Positions 35,082-64,000 of a stretch of DNA of 64,000 nt are shown piece after piece. The notes beneath the pieces were generated by a model. It did no database searches. It worked only from the letters and a program-made list of their open reading frames with translations, and was not told the DNA's origin. A program made the position numbers and the translations under genes. How positions within the stretch are numbered: the stretch's first letter is position 1; the number at the start of each line of letters is the position of its first letter. Source of the DNA: Kudoa neothunni (taxonomy: Eukaryota > Animalia > Cnidaria); contig OZ199839.1 in assembly GCA_964304625.1 (NCBI GenBank), positions 10,325,287 to 10,389,286 on the forward strand, given 5' to 3'.

Positions 35082-38000
35082 TTAGAAGGTGACAATTTGA
35101 TGATTGATTATGTCTGTTATTACGATTTTTCCACAAGATAACACTGAGATATCTTCGGGGCTTTTGAAAAGATTGTTGGGAGTGGTTGTGGAAGAAGGAA
35201 ATTCAGCTATGACCATGCCATCACTACATTAAATCAAAATTATTGAGATAGAGTTGGAAGTGTTTACCTATTGCAGACAAGAACACGACAATTTCCAGAA
35301 TCAGACACCACCAAATTTCCCATCAGATCGAAATCTATACCTTTCGGTGTGGATAATGTGTCAATGGAGGTGTTGCCAAGATGAGATATGGTGGAAATAG
35401 GATTAGAACCTTGGCGTGGATCAAAAACCAGAATGAGATTGTTTTTGGAGTCGGTAGCGTACACTTGATTCCTAAACGAGTCGTATGCGGTGTAAACAGG
35501 GTAAAATCGAAGTTTGTCATAGTTTGTATCTAAAAAAAGTAAATTAATATAAGAATATAACTAATCCACAATTACATAAGTTATCTATGTGGATTCCTTC
35601 TGTGTTTATCAATTGGATTCTAGCGTTATCTCTATCACAAACAAAGAATTTATTTCCAGAGTTGTTGAAACAAATGCCCATTGGAGAACGAAAGTTTCCA
35701 GCAGTGTATCCTTCTTTGCCAAAACAAGCTTTGGGTTTTAATATAAAAGTTTCCCGCGCTGAATTAGTAGATATAATTTCTTTATGGAAGAGTTGGATGC
35801 GATGGTTGGTTAGTTCACTGACCACAATGAGATCCCCATCGTTGTTTAAAGCAATACCAGATGGACATGAAAAATGCCCGACTTTCTGACCATGCGATCC
35901 AAACACTCCAAGTTGTTCTCCTCGTTTTCCCAACACCTAATTCATTCAAAAATTTTCCAGTACCGAAAAATTTAGGGAATAAAACACTTCTACCTGTAGT
36001 CGATGGTTGTAACTGTCACACACAAATATTTCATGATTATTGTTGGAGGTGACACCCAAAGGGGACTTGAATTCTTTGGATTTGGTTCCATAGGCTCCAA
36101 TTTTAAAAGGTTGAATTGATTTTTGCGACTCATAGTCCCTTTTTTGCGAATGCATTCACATAGAATGGGCTTCCTTTGATAGCGCTATCTCCGATGGAAA
36201 CTTCAATGGCGTGCTTTCCAGTCACTTTTGGCACGTAACTCACCAAATAGCTTCCATCATCTATTAGAATAAAATATGGGGTTGTATATTAAAGATTGAA
36301 AAAAGTAGATTATATATATTCAATTCCTTATAAATATGACATTTGAGTAAAATTCAGAAAAAGTTATATTTTTTATAAATTAAAAGAATAGATTTTAATA
36401 AAAAAATATAAAAAAAACAATTTTACTCACCGTGAAAAATATGTAATTAATTACATCTCAGTTATTCTTAGTTCAAACAAACAATCAGTAATCTACGAAA
36501 AGTTCATTAACGATTCTCAAAGAAATTATAATTCTGAATACGCGTCTGTATATAAATTTAAACAAATATTAAAAGAAGTGACTATTTCGTTAAATTATAA
36601 TGTACAGTAGATGTTAAAAAATAAAATTTATAAATCAATTATAAATAGGAGTTTCTGGGATTTAAAATGGTTACTGGGCGTGAGCAGGTGCAATTAAGAA
36701 TTAAAAATATCTGTTGTAACTGCCAATATTAAATACTAGATTTGAATTAAAAAAATACAGTTATAATCCTTTAAATTTAAAAAAAAATAAAAATTAAGTT
36801 AAATTCTTAAATATGAAAAAAATTAATAATAAATTATCTTAAAAATATTTAATTTATGTTGGGAAAATATTTCATCGAAAAGTATTAAAAATGTTAACGA
36901 TTATTCAAATAGTAAAATTGAAAATTACGATGATTCTTAACTGACACATTTGTATCGAGTATATGGTTGCTGGAAGAAGTGATATTTATTTGTAGATTCT
37001 TATTCACAGCAATATTATTTCCAAACCTATCCATTGTGACAACTCGAAAACACTGAGGTTCATTGACAATGGCATTTTTGATGCCATCACCAGAAGCAAA
37101 TGATAATTCAGCATAGGTTGAGAATATTTCAACGGAACCGATAATATTAGAGCCAATATTATCGGAAATCTAGAATAAATGTGTTCAACTTGGATTGTAG
37201 ACAGTAGTCCATCAACAAACATACGGGATTAATATTTTTTTTGAAAATAATGCTATCATCTTCTTCAGGTTCGATCTTTAAGGCTTGAAATTCGGAACAC
37301 AAATTTTTCAGATGAAACTTAAGGTTTAGTATCTTTACAGCATCGTCACGAGATAGGTGTTTGTGAGAGACCGATTCGAGGAAAACCATTTTTCCTAGTT
37401 CCATCTCAAGCGCATCTTTCTGAACGTCTAATTTTTTTAGTTTTAGGCGAATTCCTTTGTTGAGATAGTCTTTTATTTCATCCCCCATCATGCTGATTTC
37501 TTTGATTCTTTCCTAAGTTGGTCAAACAAAGTTAAGAGATTATTCGCAACAACATCGCTAGTATACTTGTACACTTTGATTTATTCTACTTACAATATCC
37601 TCTTCGCATTGTTTAAGGTTTTCAATGGTGGTTTCGATGTTGTGGACAGCATCTCTGATAAGAATTTGATTATTCTTATTGTTCTCAAGAAGTTCTATAA
37701 ACAGTTTCCTCTGTTGTCTATAAATATCGCAGATGTCAAATATCTTGTGTTCTCGATGCCCAACTATCTCACAAACTCTACACATCAACTCCTCGCAGTC
37801 ATTACAAAAGTATTTCAATAGGTTTTTGTTGTGTAGTCTAAATTTTAATCATTTGTCATAAACAACTGATATGAATACACATATTCATACTTGCAGTATT
37901 TGTATTTTAACTCTTCGTTAGGTAATACACTTACGTTGGCTTCATTTTCCACGTCCAACGGAGGTGATTCTGTAGTTGGTAAAACAACTGAATTTCTTAT

Positions 38001-38297
38001 GAGATCACACAACTTTTCGAGCTGAAAATTTCTAGGAATACCCTTTAGAAAATTATCTGGACCACCCTCACCAATTATTGTAATTTTTGAACATATTGGA
38101 CAAGTCAAATATTTCCCAAAGTCAACATCCCCATAAGATCGAGTTGTCAACATATTCATTATGCATCCTGAACAGAAGCTATGACTGCAATTTAAGTGTT
38201 TAGGATTTTCCATCACTCCCAGACATATGCCGCATGTGAGAACCTCAACAAGATTCTCAAATATAGAAATATACTCTTCCGGGGTAGCTCCCTGCAT
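35082..38297 (-). CDS. TRIM-NHL E3 ligase (TRIM2/TRIM3-like): RING, one B-box, coiled coil, filamin repeat, six NHL repeats
   Basis: RING CGIC...LNCSHSFCSGC...CPIC; B-box YFCNDCEELMCRVC...HREH; coiled-coil exons; filamin ASGDGI...DDGSYLVSYVP...G...I.V.....IKGSPF. Six NHL units (e.g. EFKSPLGV...IFVCDSYNHRLQV, NFRSPMGI...VCDRDNARIQL) end at TAA 35082. Confidence 0.92.
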
Positions 38298-39589
38298 TCT
38301 TGTCAAACAACAGTACAACCGTGTGTTGGATTAGCCCCTTTAGACAATGGAAATTTGTTTACGTGAAGTCTGTTCAATTGAATAATAACATTTCTATTAA
38401 CACATCTTATACAAATCCATAGCAGGTAATTATTTATGTTTCACACCTACTAAAAAAATGATCACAACTAATCCTGTCTCTTCGCAACATCAATTTAAAA
38501 AAATTGTGTTTTTCAATCGGTTAAAAATTATTAACAGAAATATAATAATAAATTGTAATTTAATTGTTCCACTCAATTTATTTGTTTCTCGATAAGAGTA
38601 TATTATATAAATTCGTTGCAATATTTAGAAAGTTCGTAAAAATTAAGTTATACCTTCATTCTCTCCATAATACAACTTATTTCCACGACTATTTTGACTA
38701 AAAAAATGGTCTAAACTATAAAAAGAAATAAAATATTTAAATCCAAGGATTTGTGGCGTAAAGTTTAACCGTCGAATACCTGGAGGTTGCCTTGCCATTG
38801 TGTCCAATCAGTGCTTATTATATCAATAACTTTTACAAAATACTTTCTTCCCTTGGTGTATTTTATAGAATATTTGTGATTTTAAAAGTATTTAAATAGC
38901 CGAGTTTTATGTTTAATATTTTCGCTTTAAATCAAAAAAGAACAAAAGTTACACGAATACCTGATCATGCTCTCCGTGGTCACCTAATAAATAATAACGT
39001 TAAGATAGTCAAAATATATAAAAAACTTTTCTACAGTAAGATAAACATTACAAATGTATTTTGAAGCAAGGCATTTTTTAAAATTATTTTTTTTCTAGAA
39101 CAACTTGACTCTGTGAACTAATTTAATCTTACATGGGAATAATTCATATTATAATAATTTCGTTAGATTACATTCCAACAAAAAGAAGTAAGTTAAATGT
39201 AGTAGTTTAAAGTTTAAATAAGACCATCTTATCATAACTTAAAAATTTAAAATCTTAAAATCCTTAGACTATATACATTTAACGTATTTCTGTCAATAGG
39301 GGAGGAGATTTCCTAATAAAATCATGGATTTTGAGAATAAAACAAAACCTCAACTGTTAAAATAATAATAATAACAATAAGTAAATGTTAACAAATAATA
39401 AAACAGTTGACCTCTAATTTTTCACGCTATTCAAAGTATATACAAGCATAATTATTATTGTTCTTCGCACTTTTGCGAATAAACGCCACAAAAACGCATC
39501 ATTGATTTATTTTTATTAAATGTATTATATTTTAATATGTAAAAAATAACGTAAATAATTATTTTCTCAACCTTGAATGCAATAATTTT

Positions 39590-40606
39590 GGCTAAATTAC
39601 AGTATACGGGAATTTAGGGCGGAATGTCATCTTATAAGAGAATATTCACATTTGAGGATATTGACAGCACCACAATGCTTGATTATGGCTATTTTCGAGA
39701 TGACCTCGAATACACTATCAAGGTTTTGCAAAACGTGGGTCTTTTGCATACTTTTCGTAAATGTGTGTGCGGAGAGAGTATGTACATATTGGCAAGGAAG
39801 GATGTCAACGATGGATACCAATTCAGGTGTAGCGTGTGTAATAAAAGATGTTCTATCCGAAAAGGGACAATATTTGAACTATCGAAGCTGCCTTTGTGGA
39901 CAATTTTTATTGGAATGGTTTCTATCATCCAAATATGACGTATGAAACTCTACGTCAACATTTAAATATATCCTCAAATTCAACGATATTGGAGCTGAAA
40001 TCTGTTATTAGAGACTTAATGACTCTAAAATTAGATGATGAGCCCATTAAAATTGGAGGCGAGGGAAAAATCGTCCAAATCGATGAAACAGCCATCTCAA
40101 AAAAGAAAATATGATGTTGGGAGGATTTTAAAAAATCAACAGTATTGGATGGTAGGTGGGATCGACGAGGACGGAGACTGCTTCCTGAAAGTTACCAAGA
40201 TTCGGAACAGAGAAGTTCTCGAAAATATTATAACAGAAAATGTGGAGGCGGGCTCGACCACTTGGACAGACGGTTGGCGCGGATACAACACTTTGGAAGA
40301 TTTAGGATTTATTCATGGGGTTGTGATCCATAAGCGGCGATTCGTTTCTCCTGGAGGGATTCATACAACCCGTATAGAATCTACTTGGGGAGCATTCAAA
40401 CGAAAATACAGGAACGCCACTAATAAGAATCCAGAAAATCTAGATGGTAACATATCTGACTTCTTGTTTAGAAGAAAATATTTTAAAAAAGAATTAAGCA
40501 CCCTCTTTAAATATATATGATTATATTTTCACATTAAAATATTTCCGATTTTTCCCGAGAGCGCCAATATTTTCTACGAAGATTTCCCGTATACTGTAAT
40601 TTAGCT
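39590..40606 (+). mobile_element. Merlin (IS1595/ISXO2-like) DNA transposon, complete ends, 1017 bp
   Basis: TIRs GGCTAAATTACAGTATACGGGAA (39590) and TTCCCGTATACTGTAATTTAGCT (40606), with a perfect 8-bp TSD ATAATTTT on both sides. Transposase 39624..40520 lies in three frames, with a Zn ribbon (CVCG...CSVC) and DDE motifs VQIDET, WTDGWRGY, HT.RIESTW. Confidence 0.96.
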
Positions 40607-44329: not shown

Positions 44330-46390
44330 ATAATAAAATATATAATTAGTTGGTAAATAATTGAAACTAGCTGACAGTTTTTGTGGTGGTATATCGTGAG
44401 GATTGCATGTTTGTTGTTTGGTTTCTCTGTGAGCTTCTACCCAATGACGACACCAGCTCACTACGCAATTTTTTTGTTTGCGAATACCAGTATTAAAAAT
44501 ATGAGCAGCCCTTGTGACGAATTAATCACAATGAATATGATGGAGAAAATATTTCGGTATTCGTTATCAGTGATGGTATATTGAAGTAACAAAGGAAGGC
44601 CAAGTATCACCGATAAAATAAGCACTCGTTTGCATGTGTTTGTAACTTTTGATCTTTTCTTCATTTGTATATCTTCTGAATTTCTGAGTTTAAACATGAC
44701 GCACATTGTGATAATCGTGTTGATTCCCAATACTATTCCTCCCGGAATGTTAAGGGTGTAAAGTTTCACCCAACCGTATGGAATACAACTATAGCAAATG
44801 TTATGATCAAACAAGATCAGCGACCGATCGTATTACTTGTTGTTATGAGTGTAGTTGTGTTGTGAGAAATAAACACAGAATCCCACCACAATTGCTGGTA
44901 TTGCTAAATCAAACGCATGTAAACAATCAAAACTAAACAATATAATTCCAAAACAACTACTTACACCATCCACACAGAAACATTGATTGGAAATGAATCA
45001 GTTCACGACTGTAAAACACCAAGACAAGTTTTGTGTACATAATTATTGATACAAAAAGTATCCATAAATAATGGCACAGAATGCCGTAATGAGTAATGGA
45101 TGACATTACCAAACATGTGTAATAGTGATTTTTGGAGTAATTACCCATCACATAAGATAGCTGTAGAATGAGCAATGCAACGCAAAAGTTAATTTGTGAT
45201 CTGAGTGCGAGATTGCACTTATTCCTCCTAAAAACCAATACGATAGTCAAACAATCATCTTCGAGTGATTTGAGGCATAAATAAAATTACTCTAACGAGC
45301 GCATAAATGTTATCACGCATAAAAATAGTGAAAATATTGAGACAGAGACCAACACAAGCGATATCTCTCGTTCGTGATATGAGTTAGACTGTTGGTTGTC
45401 ATCTGTGGATATATCGAAGAGCATCGCGTAGCTAGTGGTATGGTTGCAGCTACAAGTGACATTATATGAGAGGCTGACTTTCTTTATAGTTAAGGGACAC
45501 AATATCTTGTTTCCCAAACGTAGCCATTTGCCTAGAAATTAGAACAGTAAATCAGACGGTTGAAAATAAAAATAACGAAAAGTACGGTTCAGAGTGTAAC
45601 ACTTAATGGAATTGATTTGGTAAGGTTCAGCCTTCACCAATTGACTGTAGGTGATATTCATATGCTTGGTGTGATTGTTTTGTATTTTCAGCACCAAGAT
45701 GTTTCCAACAAATGTTTTATTGTTGGTTGTTTCTCGTTTCTGACTGTTGGTGACGGCTAACATTATTTTCTCGAGGTCATTGTTGTTGGTGTTGGGTAGG
45801 GGTGGGTCGGCTATGTCTGTTAGATTGATGAAAAGATTAAGTTTTGAATTTTCTAATTTTGCAGCGTTGAGTTTTTTTTGTTGATCACCATTTGTTAGTC
45901 CTGAATTCAGGATTTTGGGGCTGGCGGAATAAGGATTAACGGCATTCATTTCGTAATAAAGAGTATTGGTTGATTTGGACAACTCAAACTTTTTTATATT
46001 GATATGTTCCTTTTTGATTTCGTTTTCGACATCCAACTTTAGCAACACTTCATCTAATATATTTATTTTTTGGAGATATTTCCTTGATAGCAATAAAATT
46101 AATAAAAAATTAAAATTATGAACAATATATTAATAAAGATACCGTTTTTGATCCGATCTCATTACTTTGGTAGTATTTTTTACGTCGCCGTTTGTTTGGG
46201 GCTGGGTTTCATCGACAATGCTGCCAGACTCACTTTTCAGCCACGAATCAATAAACACTTCTGCATTCTGTACAGGGATAGTCACATGTACAAATAGTAA
46301 TAAAAATTAATAACTTTATTTAATGTGTCCAGTATTTCTGAATCTATGCTTGATGTTGGATTCACTAGAATATCATTCCAATCAATATCT
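44330..46390 (-). CDS. Adhesion GPCR: GAIN/GPS domain and secretin-like 7TM exons
   Basis: GPS C.......W.....C..........VTCSCNHTTSYAMLF; TM1 ISLVLVSVSIFSLFLCVITF; TM2 QINFCVALLILQLSYV; TM3 HYGILCHYLWILFVSIIMYTKLVLVF; TM7 FIVINSSQGLLIFL (NS.QG motif). The stop position is uncertain. Confidence 0.93.
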
Positions 46391-46459
46391 AAAAAATATG
46401 GATTGTTAATGCATTTTTATATATTGAAGCAACTCCAAGCGAAATTGCGACCCTACCAA

Positions 46460-49400
46460 GTTTTATTCTAATGGGGGATTTGTCAATCAAACATGTTGAT
46501 TTGTATTTCAAGGAATATTTTTAAGCTTTTTCACTTTACCAACCAAAAGCGTACACTTTTTCTCCACACAACTAATATCCGCTATTCTTTTTTCAATGGA
46601 AAGTTTTCTACTTTATCATTCATTTTAATCAACTCCCACTCCATATCCAAGTTGCTGTAGTTGCTTTCGAGAATAAAGTCTAAATATAACTCTCCATCAA
46701 GGTATCTTGCTTGAAGAGCAAAATCAGTTGGAACTATTAAATGATTACATTTTAAAATGGATTTTATTTATCTTTTCAAACAAAGTATACCTTTTTTAAT
46801 TTGATAAACTTTGCTGCTACTACGTAGAGATTCAGAGTCGATCTCTAAGGCATGATTTTTAGAGTGATCATAGTTGTCGATTTGAAAATTGCAATGAAGA
46901 CCATCACAATCCACATAAATATTCTCCGTGATCCAATCTTCACCAAACGATAAATTCATATTATCATCTAACCGTTTGAAAGTAATTGTCAGGCCTATAG
47001 ATTCCAGAGGTTCTCGCAAAGTTATATATATTTTTAAAGCTTGATCACTAATTTCGTGACTTATGTTGTAGGTGGTTCGCTCTATAGGTTTATTTATTTA
47101 AAAATAAAACTCCATACGAACAACTAATTTTATTACTTGTAGAAGGTATCATATAATTTGTTGGGTTTATAACCACCTCAGAATTCCATTCAAAGATGTA
47201 CGACTTTAATCCATTTATTTCCCCAATTTCAATATTGCATATTCTGCTGTTACATTCGACAAAGTTCCCTAAATTTCGATCTGTACACGGTGATGTTGGA
47301 TATTTTTTCTTTCAACATCCACTCAATATCCATTTTAGGATGTGCTATAGTTGTTAATGTTATCTTTATTGCCAGATTTTTATTGTTGACGCTGTGATTT
47401 ATATTGTAATTGGTTTGATCTAATCAATAATTTTATTATTTTTTATTTATTGCCGTATTTTTATTCTAGCTATTGAATACGTATAATACATAAATCAATT
47501 TTATACGTAAAATAAGATGAACTATGTCAAATTGCGAGTGGGAAATTAATTAGAAAAAAATATTCATTTCGAGTAATTGTAAATTTCTAATTGATTAAAC
47601 ATAAAACATATATTTTAATTATTCATTACGCTTTTTTTTTCAGCACCGTCAAAGTTAGGCTCAGATTAATTTTATGACTTTATAATTATTAATAAATTAT
47701 AAAACACCATTTTAAATGAGTTTACCGAAACATTAGAAAATATGATGCCAACAAAATTTCTAAAACTATAGCGGAAATCTTGAGCGAGGTAATCGCATCC
47801 AAACAAATAATGTTATCTGACTATTGGCATAGTTAATGTGTAGTAAAATTAAAGATAAATATATCTTTAATTTTGACACAGATTTAGACTATATTATATT
47901 TTTATACATTGTATTTCACCTTGAAAAAATTAAACTATTCATTATAGATAATTTCTGCCATATAATTTGGTTACATCAGCATTTGTATAATTTACGTATC
48001 TTTTATCAAATAATGACGATCACGTGATTTCAATGATTTTTTATTCATAAATATTAAATTCTACAGTGCTTTTTATTTTCATATCATCGTACCATACTTT
48101 TCCACCAAAATTTAAATTTCGTTTATTCATAAAAATTAACAGATCTATAAAATTAACACCCCAAAATGAAGTTTAATCCTAAGAAATGATATTATGGAAA
48201 ATAATCCCAAATATTTTGTTTTTGCTAGCATTTATAACGAAAACGTGTGAGGTATGAAGGTAATTATAAATATTACTCGTTTAGGATGGAACTCGTATAT
48301 TTATTTTTTAATTTAAATATTAGAATAGAGTAGCGATATAATTCACGTTTTTAATATCGAAAATATGAACAAGAACATCAAATCGAATTTTATATTTTAT
48401 TTGAGAATCTTTAAACTCAATTATATTAAAATACCATTAAGAAAGTAAATTGAATAATTCGATTTAATCGGACTGATTATATTTTTCCATTGACATTTAA
48501 TAATTTTTTACTTCTAAATTTTTTACCATCAAATTATCAAATTTATGTTCATTTAAAAAAAATGATTATTGTGTATTTTTAATATTTTTAAAAATTTTTG
48601 GTCGTGTCAACTCAGATTAAAAAATTAACTGCGCGTGCGCATGTCGCATGTGTTATTGTTTTTGCTATTTGTCCAAATAAGAATAATCTTTAGCTAGTGC
48701 GTGTAATAAAAAATACCCCGAACAATGGTGATATCTGACACCCCTTGAAATAACGGGCTACGAAATTGCAGCAAATGGTCAACTGTCTTATCATAATCAT
48801 TTAGCAGGAGAGAGCATACTAAATTTGAACAATTTAACACTGTTTCAATTTCTATTGGCTCTGAGTCGTCATAGATTTTGTATTCTTTTTGTAGCGAATA
48901 GACGAGAGGTAATGATGTGTATTGGGCGTCGAGGGTAAACTTGAAACCAACTGCATTCTCAGTTGAAATTTTGTAATCTCTGCTGATTCGGTAGTTTACT
49001 TTTGCTAACAGTATATGAGATAACAATTTACAAATCACATAGGTTGAATGAGCGGTTTAGGGGTGACTGGAATTAATCCGAGGCGCGTGTCGTGCTTAGT
49101 AAACGACATGGTCACAACTCGCCCATAACTTTGTTTCTAACATGAATATAATAGCCAATTATTAATTCAATATTATTTTTTAAATTATATTAAGTTGCTA
49201 AATATTATTTATTTGGTCATGTTTTCTCAAATTTATATTCGAATTAATTACGTAAAATGGGGTTGACTTCAGTCTAAAATAAAAATGGAAATAAAAGTTC
49301 AAAATTAATAGGAGTTTACAATAACCTATCTATTGTATATTAAAATTAGATATTCCAATGATTTGAATAATTAAAATTGAATTTTATTTGTTAAATTAAT

Positions 49401-52400
49401 TAACGTAGGAATATGAATTAGAGAGTACATTTTGATTAAAGTGTTTGTGATATTTAAAAAAAACGCAGATCTAACAATATTTTATTGCTCTATTTTTTGA
49501 TATAAATGTTTAATATGATATTATTAAAATCGAATTTTAAAAATAGTTTTACTAATTAGAAAATAAAAAATTTAAATTTGTAGAATAAGAATCTTGCAAA
49601 TATTAGATTCAATTAATATATTAAAAAATACATTTAATGACATTAATTATTTTTTATCATTTTAATAGACCTTCAATAGATCAAAAATAAAAGTCTAGAT
49701 TAATTTTTATAACACTAAAACAGAGAATTATTAATAGACTTCTTCTGTTCAGATTTAATGTTGATTCAATAATTTGAACACGCTCTTACACATAGAACAA
49801 CGATAGGGGGTAAAGATATAACAATTTATGATATATCTTTAAATATACCGACCTAAAATAATCCAAGCTGATTTTAATCTAGGTCTATTAAAATGCATAA
49901 CAATCCAACAATGATGGTTTTCATAAGATGATAACACAAAAAAAGTCAATTTAAATTATTAAGAGATTGCAATGTTTATTCGCTGGGAAACGCTATATTT
50001 GTTGATGGTATCTGTGTGCGTAGTTGTCCACTCCAACTGAATACGTCGACATGCTGTTGGTGTTTATTGACCACAAATGTGCATTCGGATGAATGGCATT
50101 CATTATCCATATCATCCTTGTAACTATGAGGCTCCGAGCTTGTCTCGCTACCACATAAAAACAATTTCCATTTTGAAATTGTTTATGCTTGTGTGTTTTG
50201 GCAAAAGTGAACAGTGAAGCTAATTGAGTTTATTTTGATGAGAAATGGGTCACGTACCATTTTTTATCAACTAAAAAGGAGGTCAATTATAATAGAAAAA
50301 ACTCCATAAAAAGCTACTTTTGGGTATCCTTAAGGGTTCCTGTTTCCAACAACAAATTCCGAGAATATATTCAACACATAATCATGGAAAAGGGGTCGTT
50401 AATTTGGGATTATAAATTCGCAATTCCTGCTCATACAGCTTATTTCTTTTGATTTTTTATTTATGTGATAGTTTGAGTGGAGTCTTGTCCAAATTCCCAT
50501 TCTGATCGAAATTTTTTTTATATGCGATCTTCAATCTAAGTCTAACAATAAGCGTATTTTGATTGATTTCGGTAAGCGGCTTCATAATTGGGATAACTCT
50601 AAGTTAAGGAAATTTAATAGATACCGCGTTTTATGACCAACTACTTAAATGATATTGCTAATGGTTCCGAGTTTCTTAGTATTGGGAGAGAATTCCAATA
50701 GAAACAAATTAAATCTTTGTTTTTATCCACTCCTTCAATTTTCGAAATTGCAAATTTTTCCTTTGCACACGCATTTTTTGTGGCTGGTTAGATTGTTTGA
50801 GAATAAATTTAGTGTTTGGTTTCCACCAGGAACCACTCAGTCAATGTCATATCGTAGTAGTAGGCTACTGGAAAGAGGCAAAAGATGAGGATAAGGTTTA
50901 CCATAGGCCATATTTTTGTTTCAATGTGAAATCAGATTTTACTAAAAAGATATATAAATAAAGTTCACATTTACGTTAGTAATCAGTGACTATTTTGCCC
51001 GGGATATTTAAATTTTTCAAATGATTTTTACTCGTGAGATATCTACATAAAATTAACTGTAATTTTCCATTTTCATTTATCGATAATCCCTCAAAAAGTT
51101 TTTACACGGAAGACTTCAAACGATCATATAGATATAGATAGATATTCCCAATTTATAATGGCATTATTACATTAATTTTATATATAAAATAAGCAATACG
51201 TAATCCTGTGAAAATATGTATATTATAAGGATTTTCATTATGTCAAATTTCGTACATTTATTGTGATAAATTTTTTACTTATTTTATTGTTTTCTAATAT
51301 TAAATAAAATTTATAATGTTAATGGCTTAATCATACAATATTTTCACAAATTTATTTACTTTAAATAAATAAATAAATAAATAAATAATAACTAGAGTTT
51401 AATAAAAATCTTGTATTTCCTAGTTATTTTATTTGTATACCTTTTACTTTTATTGAATGTACATTCACAGTTATATGAGCAATAAGGTGTTCTTGCATCT
51501 AAAATAAAACTGGGAAAATCCTCTTAATACTCATTATAAGTGAACGTCAGACCCATTTTTATAGAATTATCAGCTAACAAAAATTACATTTCAATCTCAT
51601 CATTTTAATTAATCAAAATTTATTTGTATAGCGATTAATTATTCAACAAATTAATTAAGAAATTTAAGAGAATTAAGCTAATAAAAAAAACCAAATTTAG
51701 ATCCTTCAATTTTTTTTAAATTAAAAAAAAGGGCACTTCAACTAAAAACTAAAATGTATTTTAGATCAATATTTTTTTTTCAAATAATCTTAAGACTTGA
51801 ACGGGTCAAACAACAATGAAATTTTCTTATATATGATGCTATAAGTTACCTATTTAACCTTTTCCGCGCTCTGTGCAAAAATCTTACGCGTAAACCGAAC
51901 CATCATGGTATACGACAGATATTCCACGAAAAGTCTATCCTAATACGTCCAAAAGAATTCAATTAACAAATAAATTAAAGAAACTTAAATAAAAATGTCT
52001 AATTTAGTTTAGATGGAAACATTTCTAATTCTCTTAGTACGTAAACCAGAATTATTGTCTAGGAAATGAACTTCAACTATGTGACAAAAAAAAGTAATTC
52101 ATTGGCATGAATTTTCTCTAAATCAACGCTTTCATGCTTTGATTTAGGAAAAGAATTGACAACTACTGATGAATCAGGAAGGTGAACATTAATGTTCGCC
52201 TAAATTCTTATTATTAGTTTCGAGATATGGACTCAATCTGTATCCAAAAATAGAAATTAGTAGTAAGTAACTCCTATTCGGCTTGTGGATATCACCAAAG
52301 GAAAAAGTTGTTGACATCCATTATTGTGCTAAATTTTTCTTTATTTTACTAAAGATAAGTATCTGAAAACTTCAAGAAGAAGAAATCCGCGCTAAACTCC

Positions 52401-55400
52401 AACGAATTATCACAGCGTTAATATGTCGGATTAGTATAACGTTAACGGACTAATTTAAGTGAACATTTAACTAATTTTATTGATGTTTAACCTTATTTAT
52501 ATCCAAAGTAATTTAATTATTTCAATAATACACGTATTGAAAATTTATTGAGCGAATATATGAAATACTTGTACATAATTTAAAAAATGACTATATTATA
52601 TGACCTGGGAATTTTCAATTTTCCATTTTAGAAATTAAAATTATTTTATCTATAAAAATAGATTGTTTATTTTTCAAATAATATAAGAAATTTCTGCCAA
52701 CGATACAAAACGGGGGTTTTACGAGAAAATGGCTATTTTGAGTTAATATGGGAAAACCCTACTCAGGCTATAAATGGTTAATATGTTAATGTCTCAGCGG
52801 TTTTTAGAGTTTTGTTCTTAATTAACGAAACTATCCATTTATGATAGTCAAAGCTAATCATAATAGATTTAATCTCCCTAAACATGGCAAATAGTCACTT
52901 TCTGAAGTACATACCGCGTTCTATTCTAACCGGATCGAGTTCAATTTGTTCGGAGTCCACTGTAAACAATCCGTCATAAAGTGGAACATGATTTTGTAGT
53001 TGGAAATCGCAAAAATTTGCTTCACACAAACAACTTAGAATCACCCCTTAATTTGTGTTGTGTGGGATGATCTAAATATTTCAAATTCCATCGAAAGTAA
53101 ATTTCTTTGTAAGGGAGCTCGAGATTGAATCTAAAAATAATCGTGCTCGTCTGTATTTGGTAAGTTGCATTGGATTTGCTTTGAACTACATTGAAATTTA
53201 ATTTTTTACAACATACCTAGACGTAGAGTACCTTGTGGAATATGATAGGTGGTGAAAGGCTGAAGAAGTTGCGGTGATTCCCACACCAAATTTTGATTTT
53301 TTAATCGATCCATATTTTTAAGAATCAACACACAAACTCTTTCAATGCACTCTATCCATTGAGAATTGACACCGTGTACTGCAGATTCCCCATCAATGCC
53401 ACTGGCATTTGGTGAAGTTTCTTCAATACGGTTATCTTCAACTATTAATCTCCATTTTATATAAATTTGTTCGTATGATTCGGGTTAGCTCAAAAAGAAT
53501 ATTTGTACTATCATCTTCACATGTGTGTTGTATGTTATACACACTTTTAACTAAATAAATGTAAAGTGAAACAAAATAATGGCTTGAAAATAGAGAATAG
53601 AAAAATTACCATTATGAATGATGGTGGTTGTGTTTTTGTGTAAATTATTTGAGCCTATTTCCAGATAATAGCTGTGGAATTTACTTATTTCTTTGATTGT
53701 AAAAGTATCGCAACGATAATTCGAACAATCTAGAGTAGTGTGTGAGGATACTACTTTGTTAATATTGTCAAGCTCAGGATAATTTCCATTCAAAGGTAGC
53801 TTAGTTGAATCCAATCCATACACTGAATAACGCACTGTCAAGTGCGATATATCCTCAAATAGCATTAGGTTGATTTCTATTGATTTTTTGTTTATTCTTG
53901 TAACCTTCACAGCAAAGAGTTGTTCCCCTACAATGGTGAAAATCGTTATTCAACTTGAAATCAACGAAAAATGATGCATCAACCTCTTTGTATAACCAGT
54001 GGGGTACGAGAAACTATCAAAGGAGAGCTATAATAAAGGAACCAACTATTAAGAAGGGGCGTAGAATTTATATCAAATTTTATATCACATATTTCGTTGT
54101 TGCATTCAAGCAACTGTCCTCCTGCTGATACAAAAGATTTGTTGGTTAGAGATAGCGACGAGTAAAGTTGCCATTTTAGATCCATATTTGTTCTCAATCC
54201 GTGAACGATAAAAACCACGGTAATAAGGTTCTTTGAAACACTATAGCCGATATCGTAAGCTAGTTTTTCTATTTATAACTTTATAACAACCATTCGATTC
54301 AATAAATAAAATCACCATATGATACCAATACACTGTGGTTGTTTGGAAGTAGGTTTGGGCTGTTGACCTCAACAATATATTTTCTTTTCATTGACCCCAT
54401 AGTGACAGAATAATTACAGACTTTATCCAGACAATTTATTGTAGTTTTCAACTTTGCGCGACATATAAGCTTTTGTGACAGTTACTCGGCTAATAGTGAG
54501 ATTCACTGAAAGCGTTGGAATCTCCCTCTCAAGCACTATCCTTATATTGATATTCGGTTCGCGATATAATGCAGTAATAGAAAATCTTGATTCCACTAAA
54601 TTTTTTAAAATTAAATCAATATAGATTTCTAGCAAAAATATGAGACAGATATGTTGAGATGATGGTGAATAGGCATTATTAATTTGATATTAGTCTTCAT
54701 GACATGTTAAATGATATTTTATATACAGAGATTCAACAAGTTCTGCCTATCAAAATCTATTGTCATTTTAACATTAAATCTAAAGTTCATACAAGTTTAT
54801 ACTAAAATATTATACTGACACGAAAAATTATACATCGTGATGTATGGGACGAGCGCCACTTTTTAATATATGGTTATAACTACATAATTTTATATAATTT
54901 TAGTTTTATAGGATTTAATTGATCTAATATCACTTTTATGTAACAATATTTTTTTTATTCTAAATTATATATGAAATCCTGACGGAATTATCTAGCGCAA
55001 CGAATTGTTTGTCATTTATACAAAATTACGACTTGAGTTTATTTTTTTAGAAATCACGTGACGTTGTTAACAAGTTAGAATATTAAGAAATAGCCTAGGC
55101 GTTGTATTTAAAACAATAAAAAATCACGTTACAAAGATAGAAAATTTAGTCTAATTTCTACTACGAAGGAAAAATATGTTATGGCGCTATCATAATTTTA
55201 TCGAAATGAATCAATAACCATAAAGTGTTATATGTTTTCTCTAGCTGATTAAAAATTTGATAACTGGATAGAAGATATGAGAGTCATTATTTTGGAATTT
55301 TCTGGGAAGATATATTTAAGGTCTGTGGTGTTTTTAGATACATTGGATGAATCGAATTAAACTCTCTAGTGATTAATCACGTGGCATTAATAATTGATTT

Positions 55401-58400
55401 TGTAATAATGAAAAAATATTCCTGGGGATTATTAATAAAAACATTTGTAATATTTTTGTTAAATATTGAGTTATTATTAACCCTCCCCCACGTAAGGGAT
55501 GAATTATGCACTCCAATTTTTGTATTTTTAAGAATTCCCCCTTTTAAGCATTAAATCTCTGCCTTATATTTAGTGAAATCTCTCAATATAATTCATTGTT
55601 TTATTTAAAAAATTTAAAATATTCAGTTAGAAAGAAATTGACTTAATATAACTCATTAAAACGAAGCAGACTATCTTCAGCTTGAAATATCATTAATAAC
55701 GATACTCAATGATTATTATACGATGCAAAATCAGTGTTCACATTAAGAAGATACAATAGAATTAAAATAAAATGTTTAAGAACTTTGAGAAACCATATTT
55801 TTATTTTTCCCGGACAGAGTCTGATGGACAATGAGATTATTTTGGGATTAATTTAAGATACACACAATTGGGAGCTTTGCCATTTGGATTTTGGGGGGAA
55901 CGTATATTTTTTGGACAAAAATTTTTCATTCTTTAATTTTTGACATTTATACGTAAGGAAATGATATTACAAAATAGTTCGGATGATGTTATTGCGAATT
56001 TAAATAAAAATGGAGGATATGTTGGGGAGTAACCTAGAATTTGGGACATGGCTAGTGTGATAAATGCTCTAATAATGGTTTTTTTTCGAATATTTGGGCA
56101 ATTTTCATACGAGGCAAAAAGTCGAATGGAATGATATATTAGAGAAGATATCAACTACTAAATCGGGGTGTTTCCAGTGAGAATGTATTCAAAAATCAAG
56201 AAAAAGGACGAATTTTCTCAATCATGCTAATAATAAGATTGGTTTCTATGGGGGACTTCGGAAAATATTACATCATTTTATGATTCTAGGCGAGGATTGG
56301 AAACTGACAATTTTTTCACCCCCCCTATCCCATCCAATGGCATTATTCTTGTTACAGAAGAATATTACGTTAATGACAATCTTTATAGAAACAACAGCTA
56401 CATACCTGGAATTTTCCAGGATATGACTAATCGCCAAAATTTATATTCTATGAGAACGTAACGCTAGCTAGTGTCATATGTTCAAAAGAAAAGTCGTATT
56501 ATTTTTCTTTTATAATCGGATTTCCATGATAGTGCGATCGAACAATCAAAAAAAAATAACTCTGAAATCATTATCAATTATAATCAAACCAAAGGAGGTT
56601 TGGTGGCGCAAAAGTACAGCTGTGCTTTTATAATAAGAAGATGGCTCTTCAGCATGTTTATGGATCTTATCGATGTTCCAGCGTTCAATGCTTATATAAT
56701 ACGGATATCGAAATTCCCAAACTTGCGATCAAGTAATCGAAATTGGTGGAAATGTTTTTCTTCGCAAACTTGTAGCGTAATTCATCAAACCGAATGTTTT
56801 GAGTCATCGAAGTTAAGGAATAACCATTATTCTCATATAAAAATTAGATTCATATTATTTAACAAATACATCAGGGATGTCAAACATTTATTTCTGGTGG
56901 AATAATTTTGAACCTGATACAGTCAAGATACACTCACTGTTCAAGGAATATTTACAAAAAGACCAGAATTTCCCCCTAAAATTCAAAAACCCTGCATTAC
57001 GTTCTCAATGAATTAAATAAAGAATTTGGAATGCCCCAATTGCAACTTGAAATCAAACTTATGTACATAAAATAATTTAAGCTCAATATATTTATTTGAT
57101 TTACGGACTACTTTGGGGGTAGACATTCAACGTATATATGATATCCATTCTATGGAGAATATGACGAAATCTACAAAGCGAATAAATTATACTTTACTCC
57201 AAATTATGGTAATTAATATATATATAAATTTTTTAATTGCCATATATATTCGCGGGTCATTTTATTTTATGTTAAAAACTCAATTTAACTAATAAAGCAA
57301 TAATCAACAATAACGTAATATGTTGTGAGAGGAAATAATGCAAATAATTCAAAAATAATTTATTACTATCGTTCAGTTAAGTGTATTTATACACACATAA
57401 TTGATTTCATTCTGCCTTCATTATGTCTCAATAATGAATATTTTTTCTTATCCAATTATTTAATTTAAAATTATATTTAAAAGATGATTGCCGGATTGAA
57501 AAAGAAATCCTTTCCAAATTAATCTCAATATTCATCTACAACCGCTGGTTGAGTTTGCTAGTGGTGCGATAGAGTCGCGAAAAAAAACATTGAAACTGAA
57601 TCCTCTAAGAATTTGTTCAGAGTTTTATTTTGTTGTAAAATGTTCACATGACGAATATATAGCCGATTCGTCGTTTCTTTCGTGAATCATGATTATCAGA
57701 TAAATTCGTGTTTCTTACTATATTGCTAAATTATTTTTATTCTTTTGTGGTTTTTGTGTATATTAATATAATTGTCAACCATATGAAATAATTTGTTTTG
57801 TCACATAAGTGCAATAAAATGAAAATTCTCTGGGGAGTAAAATGCATCCCCTTTATCACCCGTATTAGTTTTTTGAGCTCCGTCTTCCGAGGGTTAAGTA
57901 ACAATTTCGAAAAAATATAATTTACGAGTAATCGCGCGCTTGCGCACAATTTAATTTTTACGGATGTGATGCAGCGATTTTTCTCCTCCAAAATTTTGAG
58001 TTGGATAATAAATCTTTGTATTTTTTATACTTGAAAAATTATTGATTTTAAATAAAAACGTAAGAATTAGTTTAAACTCATTTACTTCAAAACACGCTTA
58101 CATCAATTAGGATAATCTTTTATTTGTATTATTTCGTAAATAAATAAAAATATGAACTCATATATTTTTGAGTTAGAAAGAAAATGTTAATTTCTAGTTT
58201 TTAAATTTTTTGTATAGAATAAATGACAGGTAACTGTGTACTACCGTATTATTTGTAATGTTTTAGTTCCTAGAGGTCATAAATTTCGTTATAATATTAT
58301 AATATTAAGTGTTAAATAGGAAAAAACCGATACAAATATAAGAAAATATTTTTTCACTAAAATAATTAGGATTTGATATTGAATCATTATTATACTTAAT

Positions 58401-61400
58401 TAATCATAACAGGATTATAACTAGACTAGTTAACTTTGTATCAAATATTAAAAAACCAATTTAATTAATTATTTATTTATTATAATAAATTAAAATAAGG
58501 TATGTTCCACAGAAGCGCTCACCTGAACATTTAAATCGAAAAGGGAAAATTATACGCAACTGCATCTAAAATAAACATACCCGGTGTAACCAAAATTTCG
58601 TTAAACTTTCCAGGAATGAATGTCGAACTTAAATCAAGGAGGTATCGAGTATCCGTAACAATCACAGGTATTTCCAGTTGACACATTAAATCCATACATG
58701 TAGCTTGATTTTGGCCTGATGTTAAAAGCTGCGTTCTAGTGTTGCCTTGATATATACTCCAATCAACTAGATATCTCTTTAAAGCTCCACCTGTGGTTTT
58801 ATATTTTATGGATAAGCTATGGGATTTTTGCGTTTGTGTCGTAACAATTGTATTAGTTTCTATCACAAAATAATTTGAAAACAAAAATATATATAAAAAT
58901 ACCTGGATATATAATCACTGATATTTTGTCATCAAGTTGGGGAGAAGAAATTGAGAGATGGTATGTTTCGCCTGTTGGCAATTGATCCATTTTAATCTCA
59001 AATGAACCAGAATCCATACACACGTTGTATTTATTATTTGTTGGAGGCGAAAGAAGTTTAGGTATACGATGTGTGGGTTGACTGTAGTACAGCGCTTCGA
59101 TCCAAAGTGATTTTATGTGGTATTTTGGCTTCAAATAAAGAAAAAGTTTCCCTCCTTGCCATTTATGCGTAGATGTGTAGGTCATTTTTTCTATTAATAC
59201 ACAACAGAATGTGAGCTTTAAAATCATGTATCAATATGAATTATATGTGTACTTTGAGTGAATGTGATTGATTTTTTGTGTTTTAACCAGTAGGAGTAGA
59301 AATGAATTCGATACAATTGGTTTGGATAGAGGTTGACCAAATGAAGTTCACACGTTTTTTTGAAGCAATTTATAGTTTCTACTATGATAACACTCTGAAT
59401 ATCGCCTTGACCTACCACGTTTAGTCTGTATTTGACTAGGACATTAACTTGTTCTCTCAAATACTCCAGATAAATGGTTGCAGTTGTGTCGGTTTTAAAA
59501 TCGTAAAGTAATTTATTTGGGAGATCAACTACAAAGTAATTATGTATTTCACAATCACAAATTACACTACCATTTATGTATATGTGGTCTTGATTATTGT
59601 CAAAAAGCTGGCTTGAATAGAGATTTATCGAATAATCTTCACCTGGATCCATATTTTCCACAGACAAACTACAAGTTTGAAAACCTCGACAAAATATTTG
59701 AGTTGGTTTCTCAAGTTCGTAAATTATATTGTTGGTTGCTCCTGAAGTGATGGAAAAGTTTTCCAACTCGATCGTATTAATATTTTCTTTCGGGTGAAAG
59801 TTTATTACAGAGAGCTTTTGGTTCGTAATGCCGGAAATCGTAACATAATAATCTTTCGCAACTAAAGATTAACAAGTGTAAGTAATTCTTCAAAACATTG
59901 GAATCAAATATTTCGCAAATAAAATTTAATTATTCTTTAGATGTAAAAATTGCGCACAAACTAACAGAATTACCTAGATCACCAAAATTTTTCTATCTAA
60001 TTAGTAATATGTGGTAATAATCGTGTTTATATTAGAAATATTAAATTCATTCTGTATGCGCTTTTATTTATTAAACAAAATATTATAAATTGTAGGATGG
60101 AATTCCGAATTATATATAAAATAAAATTGCGACAATATTTAAAAAAAATTAACAATAATTATTAAATAAAATTCCACGGTTTTTTATTACTGCCGTAATG
60201 CACGATTCCAATTATCTAACAAGATTTTTGAATTATCAGTATAATGATAGATGCAGTCAGTAAAGTTTGTACATCTCTCAACACAAATGTTTGGATCTCG
60301 TTTCTTTTTAAAGACTTAAAAATGCTAAAAATCTTCTGGTTTAATAAAAATAATAGAAATCTTATTAAAAATATTTTTATATGCTGTTATATTAATTATT
60401 TTCCAGTTTTTATCTAAACTTTTAAAGTAAGTATTTCATTCCATCAAAATAAATATATACCAAAATTAGTGTATTTTAACTAAAATGGTAGGTAGAATTT
60501 AGTTTCTTAATTGTTCTTATTTATAACGAATCTAATCTAGGTCACAACATTTTCATTTTTAAATTTATTGATTTATATTTTGTATATTTGAAATTATACA
60601 AATCTTTATAATTTATATTTGTATATTATATACATATTATATCATTATAAACTAGAATTTTTAATGATGAAGTTTATACTTTTTATTCAGAATAATAATA
60701 ATAAAGAATATATTGAAAAAAACAAACTTGTTAAACTTTATTTCAAGGGCGAAATACATAGCCATCTAGCAACTTTTCATTAAAATTATTCTATAGCAGT
60801 TATAGATGTGTAATTTACGGTTGTTAAATTTGAGTGTGGCTCATAATATTTCAGTAATTTTTAAATGCGCATTCTAAAAATCTAGCATAAGTTTTATTCT
60901 TTCGTCAAAATGTGAAATTTTCTAAAATCTGATATTAACAAAATATAGATTAAAATTAACTACTAAGAAGCGTGCATAACACCATTTAATTGCAAAAAAT
61001 ACCTGGCGTTATGATCACAGTAGCATAGTATGTATCCTTTAAGAAAAATTTTAACGTTTGGGGAGTGGTTGTGTCTAAATCTGGTAATTCCATCACCATA
61101 TTATGATCGGCGATATTTTCGGTGAATATTTGTTCCTCATCATCGGCATTATCAGTGGAGTGTTTTATGACAAGCTGCCTCATTTCTGAATTGGTATAGA
61201 AACTATTATCTATCATTATACTCAGAACATTGTTATTATCAATTCCGTAATCCGTCACTCTGATGTAATGTTCAACTACAGAAATATTATAGGAATTATA
61301 CGGTGATTTCATGCGCTAGACAAAAATAAATGTTACTTTTAATAGTATTACGACCGTTCACCGGGAAAACATTGGATGAGATAGACATATACAGGGGCTT

Positions 61401-64000
61401 ACTCTCATACTCGACATCATCCAGAGTCAATACACATAAACGATCAACACAGCGGACAACGTTTTCGAATATTAGCTTATCATTGTTAGCAATATGCGAA
61501 AACATATCCAACAGAGTGATTCTCATTTGGACAAAAGATAAATCTCTATCAAGATGGAACATGAACCTAGCTTGAGATCCCTTCCTCAACTCATATGATA
61601 GATAATAATGTCCAATAGCTAATGAAAATTAATCCAAAATAATATTAGTATTAGTTTTCTCATTGGTCGCATATTACCTTTGGAAATGGAAATAAGTTGA
61701 GAGCGAGAGTTGAGCGAAACTTTAATTTGGCCGAGTTGACCGATTCCTGTGTTCACTCCCAAAGGCAATAACATGTGACAACTGTGCTGTACACAGGTGA
61801 AGTTCGTGCTATCAATATTTGCATAGTTTCCAACAAGCTGATCGTTGACCCAATTCAGATTTGTAATTTCGAAATTTGGTGCAACTTTATCGTTTGGAAT
61901 GAGATTATTGTTCCATGTTAGCCACATCTGTTTATCTCTCACTAACAAATCCAAGTCGTAAATATGTTCCACAAACTCAGCTAAAGAGAATTTTATATGG
62001 ATTAAATTCTAGAAAAAGAAATTATTTTACTGTCGCAAATATACTGATTATTCAGTCCATTTTGACTGCTGACAATAAAGTTGGTAGGAGTTAGTATTTG
62101 AGAGACACTCAACCTAGGACATTCGAGGTTGTTTGAGCAAATATAGCCGCCCCCATGGTAACAGTTATTGTTGATTAGATTACTACCAACATCAACATTG
62201 TTTCTAGTGGAATAACTGCAATAGAGCTTATTGTGTTGGATAGTGATTGAATAAATCTGGTTGGTTTGTAGAGCAACTAGTTGGACATAAGGAGGGCTAA
62301 ATTCGAATCCTTCTAAATATATGTCCAAGTTAGTAAACACATCAACTAGCAATTAATTGAATACTGGAGGGGATAGAGAACAATTTTAAAATTGGTCTGC
62401 CGAAATCTCTGCTTTCATTCAGAATGACATAGAAACTGAAGTCATTGTAGTATTTCAGTTGAACTTCCACATTGACGCACAATGGGATACTTTTGAAACT
62501 AACATAGCATTCGCAATTTTTATTCGCAAAATTTCTTTCTCCAATCGAATGAAAAATATAGTCACAAAATTTGGAATGATTTTTTGAATAAGGCACTCTG
62601 ACTTTATACTTATTAACTCCGATAGTTTCTAAAGTGATATAATCCGTGTTGATTTCTAAAATTAAAATATGTTATTTAACACAATAACTTCTACTATGCC
62701 AACATCAATAAGTAATACCATCTGAGTAAAATTCGCAATGCCAATGTTGGAAATTTTTTCGACCACAAACAAGAAAAGTTTCAAGCGTTTCACTTACCCA
62801 AGTAAGCGAGCCTATAGGTGCACTTGGATTCGACTTTAAAATACCATTGAATACAGGAGTTATTATATGAGATGTTATATTGTTGGTACTGATTCCCTTA
62901 AGTATGACTATTCTGTCCAATGATCGACCATTCTTAAAAAATATATCTATCTTTTTATCTCTTATTGTCTTTTTCATTTCAACTCGATAAAATATCTTTA
63001 ATTAGAATATAACAACAGAAAATTCAGTAATTTTGTTCAAGTTACTTTGGAATCGAGGGTCAGTGGCTTTATCAATCGTATGGTATTGTTATTTGGACAT
63101 TTCAGTACTAATTTAAAAACCAAGTCCCTTAAAACTAAAATTTTTAGACCGGCGTCTTTATCAATCATAATTCTATTGGTTTGCTGATCTATTTGGATCC
63201 ATTGAGAGCTTTTTTTATCCAAGTAAGTATTTGGTAAGGCGTAGACCATCTTATTACAATATGTGAATATACGATTGTTGACTTTGTGTTTAAAAGTAAT
63301 AGTATCGTCGGCCAGTGAGATTTCAAAGTCGTTTTTATTGTAGCCTAGGTGTAGAAATTAATGAGACCAATTTATTTATCACTCTATTCTTACCAATAAC
63401 TTGCTTATAAATATAATCGTATCCAACCAGTTGTACTGACAAAACAAGATGGCGGTAATTCGCAAATTTAGCAGCAAACGATAAGGTTCTTATATAGAAA
63501 TTTAGACAGGATACAATTGGTGGGCATTCACCAAAATTCCTGCACCCATATAAAAATTCTGAGCGGCTGCCCATCGTAAAACCTTCAAGTTTGAAGTAAC
63601 ATCTGAATCTTGATAAATGATTGAACGTGGTTGCAGTGATAACTATATCATTCCCTTGCCATGAGTGATTCCAATACACTGGCTCATTAGCTAGTCAATT
63701 TATTAAATAACGCCATATATCAATAATAACCAAAATCACCTCTTATTAATCTCACATTTTCCATTATATTATTGTATTTGACAGTGATATTGTATTTGTT
63801 TTTTGCGGCAATCTTGAAAATGGATCTATTGCAACTCGTGTTTTCTTCGCACAATCCCCCACTTGAGGTAGTGCACTGTGAAGTCCGTGTCGTTTGGGGA
63901 TTATTTATTTCATCGTGATCAAGAGATTGTATGTAATAGGAACAAGAAGCCTCAGTCAGATGTGAAAATCGATGTTTGATCTCAATTTCTTCATTATTTG
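46460..64000 (-). CDS. Array of ~25 divergent FN3-like modules (about one per exon); probable ectodomain of the adhesion GPCR, 5' end outside the window
   Basis: Clusters of ~290-330-nt exons with mostly phase-1 junctions at about 61.0-64.0, 58.6-59.9, 52.9-54.6, 50.0-50.9, 48.7-49.0 and 46.5-47.4 kb. They share the pattern W/Y.L...C-x4-C-x-h-x-I..L....Y.L.I.S..L.....I..G; some have the FN3 tyrosine corner (NLYPNQLY, NMDPGEDY, QLPTGETY). Same strand as, and directly upstream of, the GAIN exons. Several exons carry frameshifts. Confidence 0.75.
51362..51390. repeat. (AAAT)n microsatellite
   Basis: Read directly: taaataaataaataaataaataaataata. Confidence 0.8.
55477..57897 (+). mobile_element. 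Decayed piggyBac element (PGBD4-like) between two exon clusters of the GPCR locus
   Basis: TTAA|CCCTC at 55477 and GAGGG|TTAA at 57897, with related subterminal AGGGATG.ATT..ACTCC motifs in inverted orientation. Transposase remnants TDNFFT (~56305) and IIINYNQTKGG..KYSC....RRW....F..LIDV.AFNAYII. Confidence 0.85.

What the first reader, a model, noticed from the sequence alone, without database searches (positions are those of the whole stretch)
44330..64000. Giant adhesion GPCR with an ectodomain of ~25 highly diverged CxxxxC FN3-like modules
Seen: a clear GAIN/GPS + 7TM unit lies downstream of at least ~25 same-strand ~100-aa modules. Most modules are one phase-1 exon, share a CxxxxC hairpin and a Y.L.I.S..L....I..G ending, and are otherwise very dissimilar. 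The array continues past the window end. Known: adhesion GPCR ectodomains typically use EGF, cadherin, LRR, Ig, Calx-beta, TSP or lectin repeats; I do not recognise a subfamily with a long array of this module. Inference: a lineage-specific receptor of >2,500 aa built by exon duplication and rapid divergence, a candidate host-sensing or attachment mechanoreceptor in an otherwise compact genome.
Basis: partly seen in the sequence, partly recalled or inferred. Interest (0 to 1): 0.8.

Follow-up and report, generated by a model that had tools for sequence, protein, structure and literature searches.

The report
Giant FN3-array adhesion GPCR, fish parasite
This is a real gene for a very large surface receptor (an adhesion-type GPCR of about 3,800 residues, with a stalk of about 33 small fibronectin-like domains) in a fish-muscle parasite, one of 15 related genes in an otherwise shrunken genome, and a new variant of a known receptor class.

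Summary
Observation largely confirmed. A minus-strand 41-exon model (about 3,790 aa, 22.5 kb) runs: signal peptide, about 33 one-exon modules (25 in the window), GAIN/GPS, 7TM. It starts 2.9 kb past the window end. Assembly statistics match Kudoa neothunni (inferred). One module folds as an FN3-like sandwich. 16 of the 25 in-window modules carry CxxxxC; modules 2-14 mostly do not, and their fold is untested. Frame breaks covered by DNA run X2 (probably a short-read library of the assembled sample) disappear, so they are assembly errors; three broken modules (49990-50941) are unresolved. The genome holds 15 such genes: 15 head modules pair one-to-one with 15 GAIN-7TM tails, and all 91 module hits lie upstream of a tail. 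A contig from another organism shows modules joined to GAIN-7TM. No RNA evidence. FN3 is already a known adhesion-GPCR ectodomain; I found no paper on this array or family. This scan had already found other members of the family elsewhere in this genome. Host sensing is plausible but untested.

The parts
44367..44788 (-). Last exon: ECL2 cysteine, TM5-TM7, helix 8 and short C-tail
   Evidence: Pfam 7tm_2 E 1e-6; the assembly's early stop disappears with run X2's letters (1-base difference at 44469)
44837..44903 (-). TM4 exon
   Evidence: splice sites and GWxIP motif read from sequence
44965..45227 (-). TM2-TM3 exon
   Evidence: Pfam 7tm_2 E 1.4e-5
45291..45533 (-). GPS, tethered-agonist-like stretch (HT/TSYAMLF) and TM1
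   Evidence: PF01825 E 2.6e-4; run X2 differs by one base at 45493 and 45531, giving the WxxxxC GPS start seen in paralogs
45586..46388 (-). GAIN domain exon (45586-46082) and two short linker exons (46143-46267, 46315-46388)
   Evidence: profile A2 finds 15 loci; homolog model matches solved GAIN domains
46447..47419 (-). Modules M31-M33, next to GAIN
   Evidence: M32 model pLDDT 88, FN3-like; M31 and M33 open with X2's letters
48717..49004 (-). Module M30
   Evidence: intact phase-1 exon
49990..50941 (-). Modules M27-M29, broken in the assembly (1-3 frame changes each, one stop in M28); error or decay unresolved
52911..54628 (-). Modules M22-M26 (M22, M25, M26 each with one frame change, not read-tested)
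54629..58580 (-). Longest intron (3.95 kb); no TM exon found, one weak signal-peptide-like candidate at 57243
58581..59861 (-). Modules M18-M21
   Evidence: intact phase-1 exons; weak Pfam fn3 E 0.0017
61003..64000 (-). Modules M9-M17; M9 crosses the window end. M1-M8 and the signal-peptide exon lie beyond, at G000:C2:10389359-10392196

Best explanation
One gene encodes a roughly 3,800-aa adhesion GPCR of a myxozoan fish parasite (genome statistics match Kudoa neothunni). SHOWN: signal-peptide exon, about 33 tandem one-exon modules, GAIN/GPS and 7TM in one strand and compatible phases; FN3-like predicted fold of the CxxxxC module; a 15-member family with the same head-array-tail layout; G-alpha genes in the genome. 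INFERRED: the modules form a semi-rigid disulfide-stabilised stalk of roughly 100 nm (about 3.5 nm per FN3 domain, own knowledge). The stalk holds a positionally conserved head (modules 1 and 5) beyond the surface coat, where it binds a partner on host tissue or on a neighbouring parasite cell. Load on the stalk exposes the TSYAMLF tethered agonist in the GAIN domain and switches on the 7TM and a G protein. Symmetric phase-1 exons let paralogs gain and lose modules, which changes reach.
For: Head module M1 has exactly 15 matches in the genome, each on the same strand 11-39 kb upstream of one of 15 GAIN-7TM tails. All 91 module-profile hits fall upstream of those tails. M5 has a counterpart downstream of M1 in 13 of 14 paralogs. 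Contig L024 from another organism (19.5% GC) has five modules, GAIN, GPS and 7TM joined by short introns. Read-tested frame breaks are assembly errors. FN3 domains fill the top structural matches, Z up to 8.6; GAIN domains are the top 4 and top 7 hits. 23 of 25 intact modules have an even cysteine count. At least 3 G-alpha loci.
Against: No RNA reads (0 laid in X5, X6), so splicing across five 1-4 kb introns and expression are unproven. M27-M29 are broken and untested. The cleavage site is H-T/T, not the usual H-L/T, so self-cleavage is uncertain. Fold Z-scores are modest (8-9) and the GAIN model is of a homolog with pLDDT 60. The fold of modules 2-14 was not predicted; profile comparison with the CxxxxC set was blank. 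No ligand, stage or location is known.
Confidence: 0.72

Rival explanations
1. Same single receptor, but mainly a structural adhesin or shed surface coat: the variable ectodomain is held by GAIN, released as a decoy or used for adhesion, with little signalling.
For: Very divergent modules; M2 and M9 have no detectable counterpart in any paralog; non-canonical GPS; no Pfam GAIN match.
Against: Seven helices, class-B motifs, ECL2 cysteine and tethered-agonist-like sequence are conserved across paralogs and two outside homologs; G-alpha genes are present.
Confidence: 0.13
2. This copy is a decaying pseudogene, or is expressed only with the broken modules M27-M29 skipped.
For: M27-M29 carry several frame changes and a stop, about three times the local indel-error rate seen; M22, M25, M26 also change frame.
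Against: All 7 coding indels covered by X2 are absent from its contigs, and 5 more occur in introns, so this assembly region is indel-prone; paralogs show the same homopolymer breaks; the paper reports about 7x coverage. Skipping symmetric exons keeps the frame, so skipping would not kill the gene.
Confidence: 0.09
3. Two or more neighbouring genes: a secreted or single-pass module protein upstream and a shorter adhesion GPCR downstream, split at a long intron.
Against: One-to-one pairing of 15 heads with 15 tails; every long-intron junction is phase 1 on both sides; no terminal or TM exon found in the long introns.
Confidence: 0.06

Closest known systems
Adhesion GPCRs (class B2) in general; best named 7TM hit Clytia hemisphaerica ADGRG6-like XP_066910546.1
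   Same: Ectodomain + GAIN/GPS + 7tm_2; tethered-agonist-like stretch close to the TxFAVLM consensus (PMC12716839); FN3 is listed among adhesion-GPCR ectodomains there and in sponge receptors (PMC4302439).
   Different: About 33 tandem FN3-like modules that Pfam does not recognise; none of the listed outside hits matches the module profile; the Clytia protein is 918 aa with an Eph-like N-terminus (a lead only). The family is its own clade in a TM5-7 tree (SH-aLRT 98); no ADGR subfamily could be assigned.
ADGRV1/VLGR1 and CELSR/Flamingo (from own knowledge)
   Same: Giant adhesion GPCRs with long repeat stalks that bridge cells and bear load.
   Different: They use Calx-beta or cadherin/EGF/LamG repeats and are conserved low-copy genes; none of those Pfam families matches here.
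Polycystin-1 / REJ proteins (from own knowledge)
   Same: Tandem beta-sandwich stalk with FN3-like domains directly before a GAIN domain.
   Different: Polycystins continue into PLAT and channel-type helices; here GPS is followed by a 7tm_2 domain ending after TM7.
Cytokine-receptor, LAR and fibronectin FN3 domains
   Same: Seven-strand sandwich, Z 7.3-8.6, rmsd about 2.5-3.4.
   Different: Only 1-17% identity; the CxxxxC pair joins the fourth and fifth strands; shared fold shows no shared ligand.

Membership tests
Adhesion GPCR | 7tm_2 (secretin-like) seven-helix domain | tested here: met
   two exons over the Pfam cut-off; seven hydrophobic segments with class-B motifs
Adhesion GPCR | GPS motif just before TM1 | tested here: met
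   21.9 bits on the assembly frame, cut-off 22.5; paralogs 25.9 and 28.1; full motif with X2's letters
Adhesion GPCR | GAIN fold upstream of GPS | tested here: met
   model of homolog L024 (37% identical to this exon, pLDDT 60): top hits are GAIN domains of ADGRG1, CELSR1, ADGRG3, GPR110, BAI2/3; no Pfam GAIN match
Adhesion GPCR | Signal peptide and extracellular adhesion-type modules in the same polypeptide | tested here: inconclusive
   genomic and comparative support strong; no transcript
Adhesion GPCR | Self-cleavage at GPS and tethered-agonist signalling | not testable with these tools
   site reads H-T/T then SYAMLF; needs a cell assay
Fibronectin type III domain | Seven-strand FN3 sandwich (CxxxxC-type modules) | tested here: met
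   M32 model, pLDDT 88, seven strands; FN3 dominates matches
Fibronectin type III domain | Pfam fn3 match at the curated cut-off | tested here: not met
   best 19 bits against 25: FN3-like by fold, not Pfam members
Fibronectin type III domain | Same fold in modules 2-14 | not tested
A named ADGR subfamily (A-G, L, V) | 7TM groups with that subfamily and shares its ectodomain | tested here: inconclusive
   125-column quick tree gives a separate clade with unresolved neighbours, mostly unnamed rows
Polycystin-1 family | PLAT domain and 11-TM channel-type region after GPS | tested here: not met
   7tm_2 follows GPS and the frame ends after helix 8

The most novel reading that the evidence does not exclude
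The 15 genes form a parasite host-recognition repertoire: fixed head and signalling tail, with a middle that diversifies under host immune pressure and by exon gain, loss or skipping, acting as long-reach force sensors that tell the parasite it has reached its target tissue.
Probability: 0.15. Interest if true: 0.8.

Novelty: new variant of a known kind. Interest (0 to 1): 0.52.

Why it matters
Myxozoans have lost most animal genes (5,316 predicted proteins in this assembly, PMC12239612), yet this genome keeps 15 genes of 11-39 kb for giant surface receptors. Homology-guided annotation would probably miss their ectodomains. How Kudoa finds and settles in fish muscle is open; these are concrete, testable candidates for surface sensing and possible antigens for diagnostics. 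They also show an adhesion-GPCR stalk built almost wholly from diverged FN3-like domains.

Tried and rejected
Pfam 7tm_2 family search of the own genome rang nowhere (uninformative, exons too short). Word searches with the TM5-7 exon and the module alignment found nothing. PDB sequence searches with module and GAIN profiles were blank. A pooled profile of modules 2-14 found only its own members, so they are not one homogeneous family; single-module searches were more informative. Sphaerospora molnari was considered as source and rejected (40 contigs). RNA runs X5 and X6 gave no reads; X1 gave only short chance matches. No paper found on myxozoan adhesion GPCRs or on the run behind L024. The spliced protein was joined only in local scripts for length and frame checks; all searches were exon by exon, by reference.

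Full report
Source. The window is G000:C2:10325287-10389286 of a 40.26-Mb genome in 4 contigs, contig 2 being 12.04 Mb, about 30% GC. These figures match the Kudoa neothunni assembly in PMC12239612: 40.2 Mb, N50 12.0 Mb, three chromosomes plus a mitochondrial genome, GC 30.41%, median intron 49 nt, about 7x coverage, annotation without RNA. The identification is an inference from these statistics. Sphaerospora molnari has a similar size but 40 contigs.

Observation. On the minus strand, two exons match Pfam 7tm_2 over the cut-off and one matches GPS. Upstream lie a GAIN exon, two linker exons and a chain of 85-105-aa exons. A splice-aware parse without any module model recovered a run of phase-1 junctions, and hand curation gave 41 exons and about 3,790 codons: a 24-aa signal-peptide exon starting 2.9 kb beyond the window, 33 modules (25 inside the window), GAIN, GPS-TM1 and three further 7TM exons. 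The next recognisable gene upstream starts about 5 kb further on. Sixteen in-window modules have an exact CxxxxC; these share a median 20% identity and no DNA repeat. Modules 2-14 mostly lack the hairpin, but nearly all intact modules have two or four cysteines, as expected of extracellular domains.

Frame breaks. Contigs of DNA run X2 (depth 7-9, colinear across introns; probably from the sample that was assembled, so a check of the consensus and not a second individual) differ by single bases at 44469, 45493, 45531, 46451, 46517, 46586 and 47267, and at five intron positions. With those letters M31, M33, the GPS exon and the C-tail are open and match the paralogs. So these are assembly errors. 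M22, M25 and M26 (one frame change each) were not covered. M27-M29 are real module copies with 1-3 frame changes and one stop (M29 weak) and remain unresolved. The two RNA runs laid no reads, which is no test.

One gene or several. The TM2-3 exon finds 15 loci and the GAIN profile the same 15. All 91 hits of the module profile lie on the same strand within 28 kb upstream of one of them (assigned by hand: 12, 11, 8, 3, 12, 2, 11, 3, 1, 3, 7, 4, 6, 4, 4). Module 1 has exactly 15 matches, one 11-39 kb upstream of each tail. Module 5 has a 30-36% identical counterpart downstream of module 1 in 13 of 14 paralogs, whereas modules 2 and 9 have none detectable. This head-to-tail pairing is the best evidence for single genes. 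A scan of the five long introns found no TM exon and one weak signal-like candidate. Searches were exon by exon; the joined model was not searched. Paralog upstream DNA could not be fetched.

Outside relatives. A TM5-7 profile against 1.84 billion representatives gave only two close hits, then generic adhesion GPCRs from E 6e-13. One is a metagenome contig 71% identical to a paralog. The other, L024 (19.5% GC, organism unknown, presumably another myxozoan), carries five modules, GAIN, GPS and 7TM on 3.4 kb with short introns. The best named hit is a Clytia receptor without these modules. In a quick 125-column tree the 13 family rows form one clade (SH-aLRT 98) with unresolved neighbours. The module profile itself was searched only by word index, so absence outside myxozoans is not established.

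Folds. Module 32 is predicted with pLDDT 88 as seven strands. FN3 domains dominate both structure searches (Z up to 8.6, rmsd 2.5-3.4), while Pfam fn3 stays below cut-off. The GAIN-GPS region of L024 (pLDDT 60) has solved GAIN domains as top hits. The fold of modules 2-14 is untested; three of them (M5, M9) or their neighbour M17 score weakly with the CxxxxC profile.

Mechanism. The shown anatomy is that of an adhesion GPCR, and the genome has at least three G-alpha loci. The sequence after the GPS, TSYAMLF, is near the tethered-agonist consensus TxFAVLM (PMC12716839). I infer a long stalk that presents a conserved head to a partner on host tissue or another parasite cell and passes force to the GAIN domain. 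Cleavage is uncertain (H-T/T). Whether the partner is host or self cannot be told here. Rivals: non-signalling adhesin or shed coat, decaying copy, split genes.

Novelty. FN3 domains are known in adhesion GPCRs of sponges, filastereans and choanoflagellates or animals, and giant repeat stalks are known (ADGRV1, CELSR; own knowledge). What I found undescribed, in the papers searchable here, is a stalk of about 33 diverged FN3-like modules and a 15-gene expansion in a reduced parasite genome. This scan had already noted other members of the family and the 5' end of this gene; those notes agree and are not independent support. Verdict: new variant of a known kind, interest 0.52.

Noticed in passing
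window 39618-40517 (+): ISXO2/IS1595-like (Merlin-type) transposase, Pfam PF12762 E 1.2e-14, split over two frames.
   Followed up: partly
window 25395-26245 (-): piggyBac-like transposase remnant, PF13843 E 8e-21.
   Followed up: partly
window 56181-56902 (+): Short ORFs in the longest intron that resemble a piggyBac C-terminus from memory; no Pfam match.
   Followed up: partly
window 17595-18505 (-): Two Kunitz/BPTI domain exons; a candidate secreted protease inhibitor.
   Followed up: partly
window 35267-38330 (-): RING, B-box-like, coiled-coil and NHL exons: a TRIM-NHL type gene.
   Followed up: partly
G000:C2:10465812-10534194 (+): Three tandem paralogs with near-identical GAIN-7TM halves but head-to-tail spans of 14, 21 and 19 kb.
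   Followed up: partly
G000:C1:16020731 and 16026427 (-): Module 5 occurs twice, 5.7 kb apart, in one paralog: a recent internal block duplication.
   Followed up: no
window 44450-49900: Twelve single-base indels against run X2 in about 5 kb, far more than the published QV 48.5 implies; apparent pseudogenes in this assembly need read checks.
   Followed up: yes
L024:434-740: One module in the other organism lacks both cysteines yet matches the profile, like M17 and M20 here.
   Followed up: no
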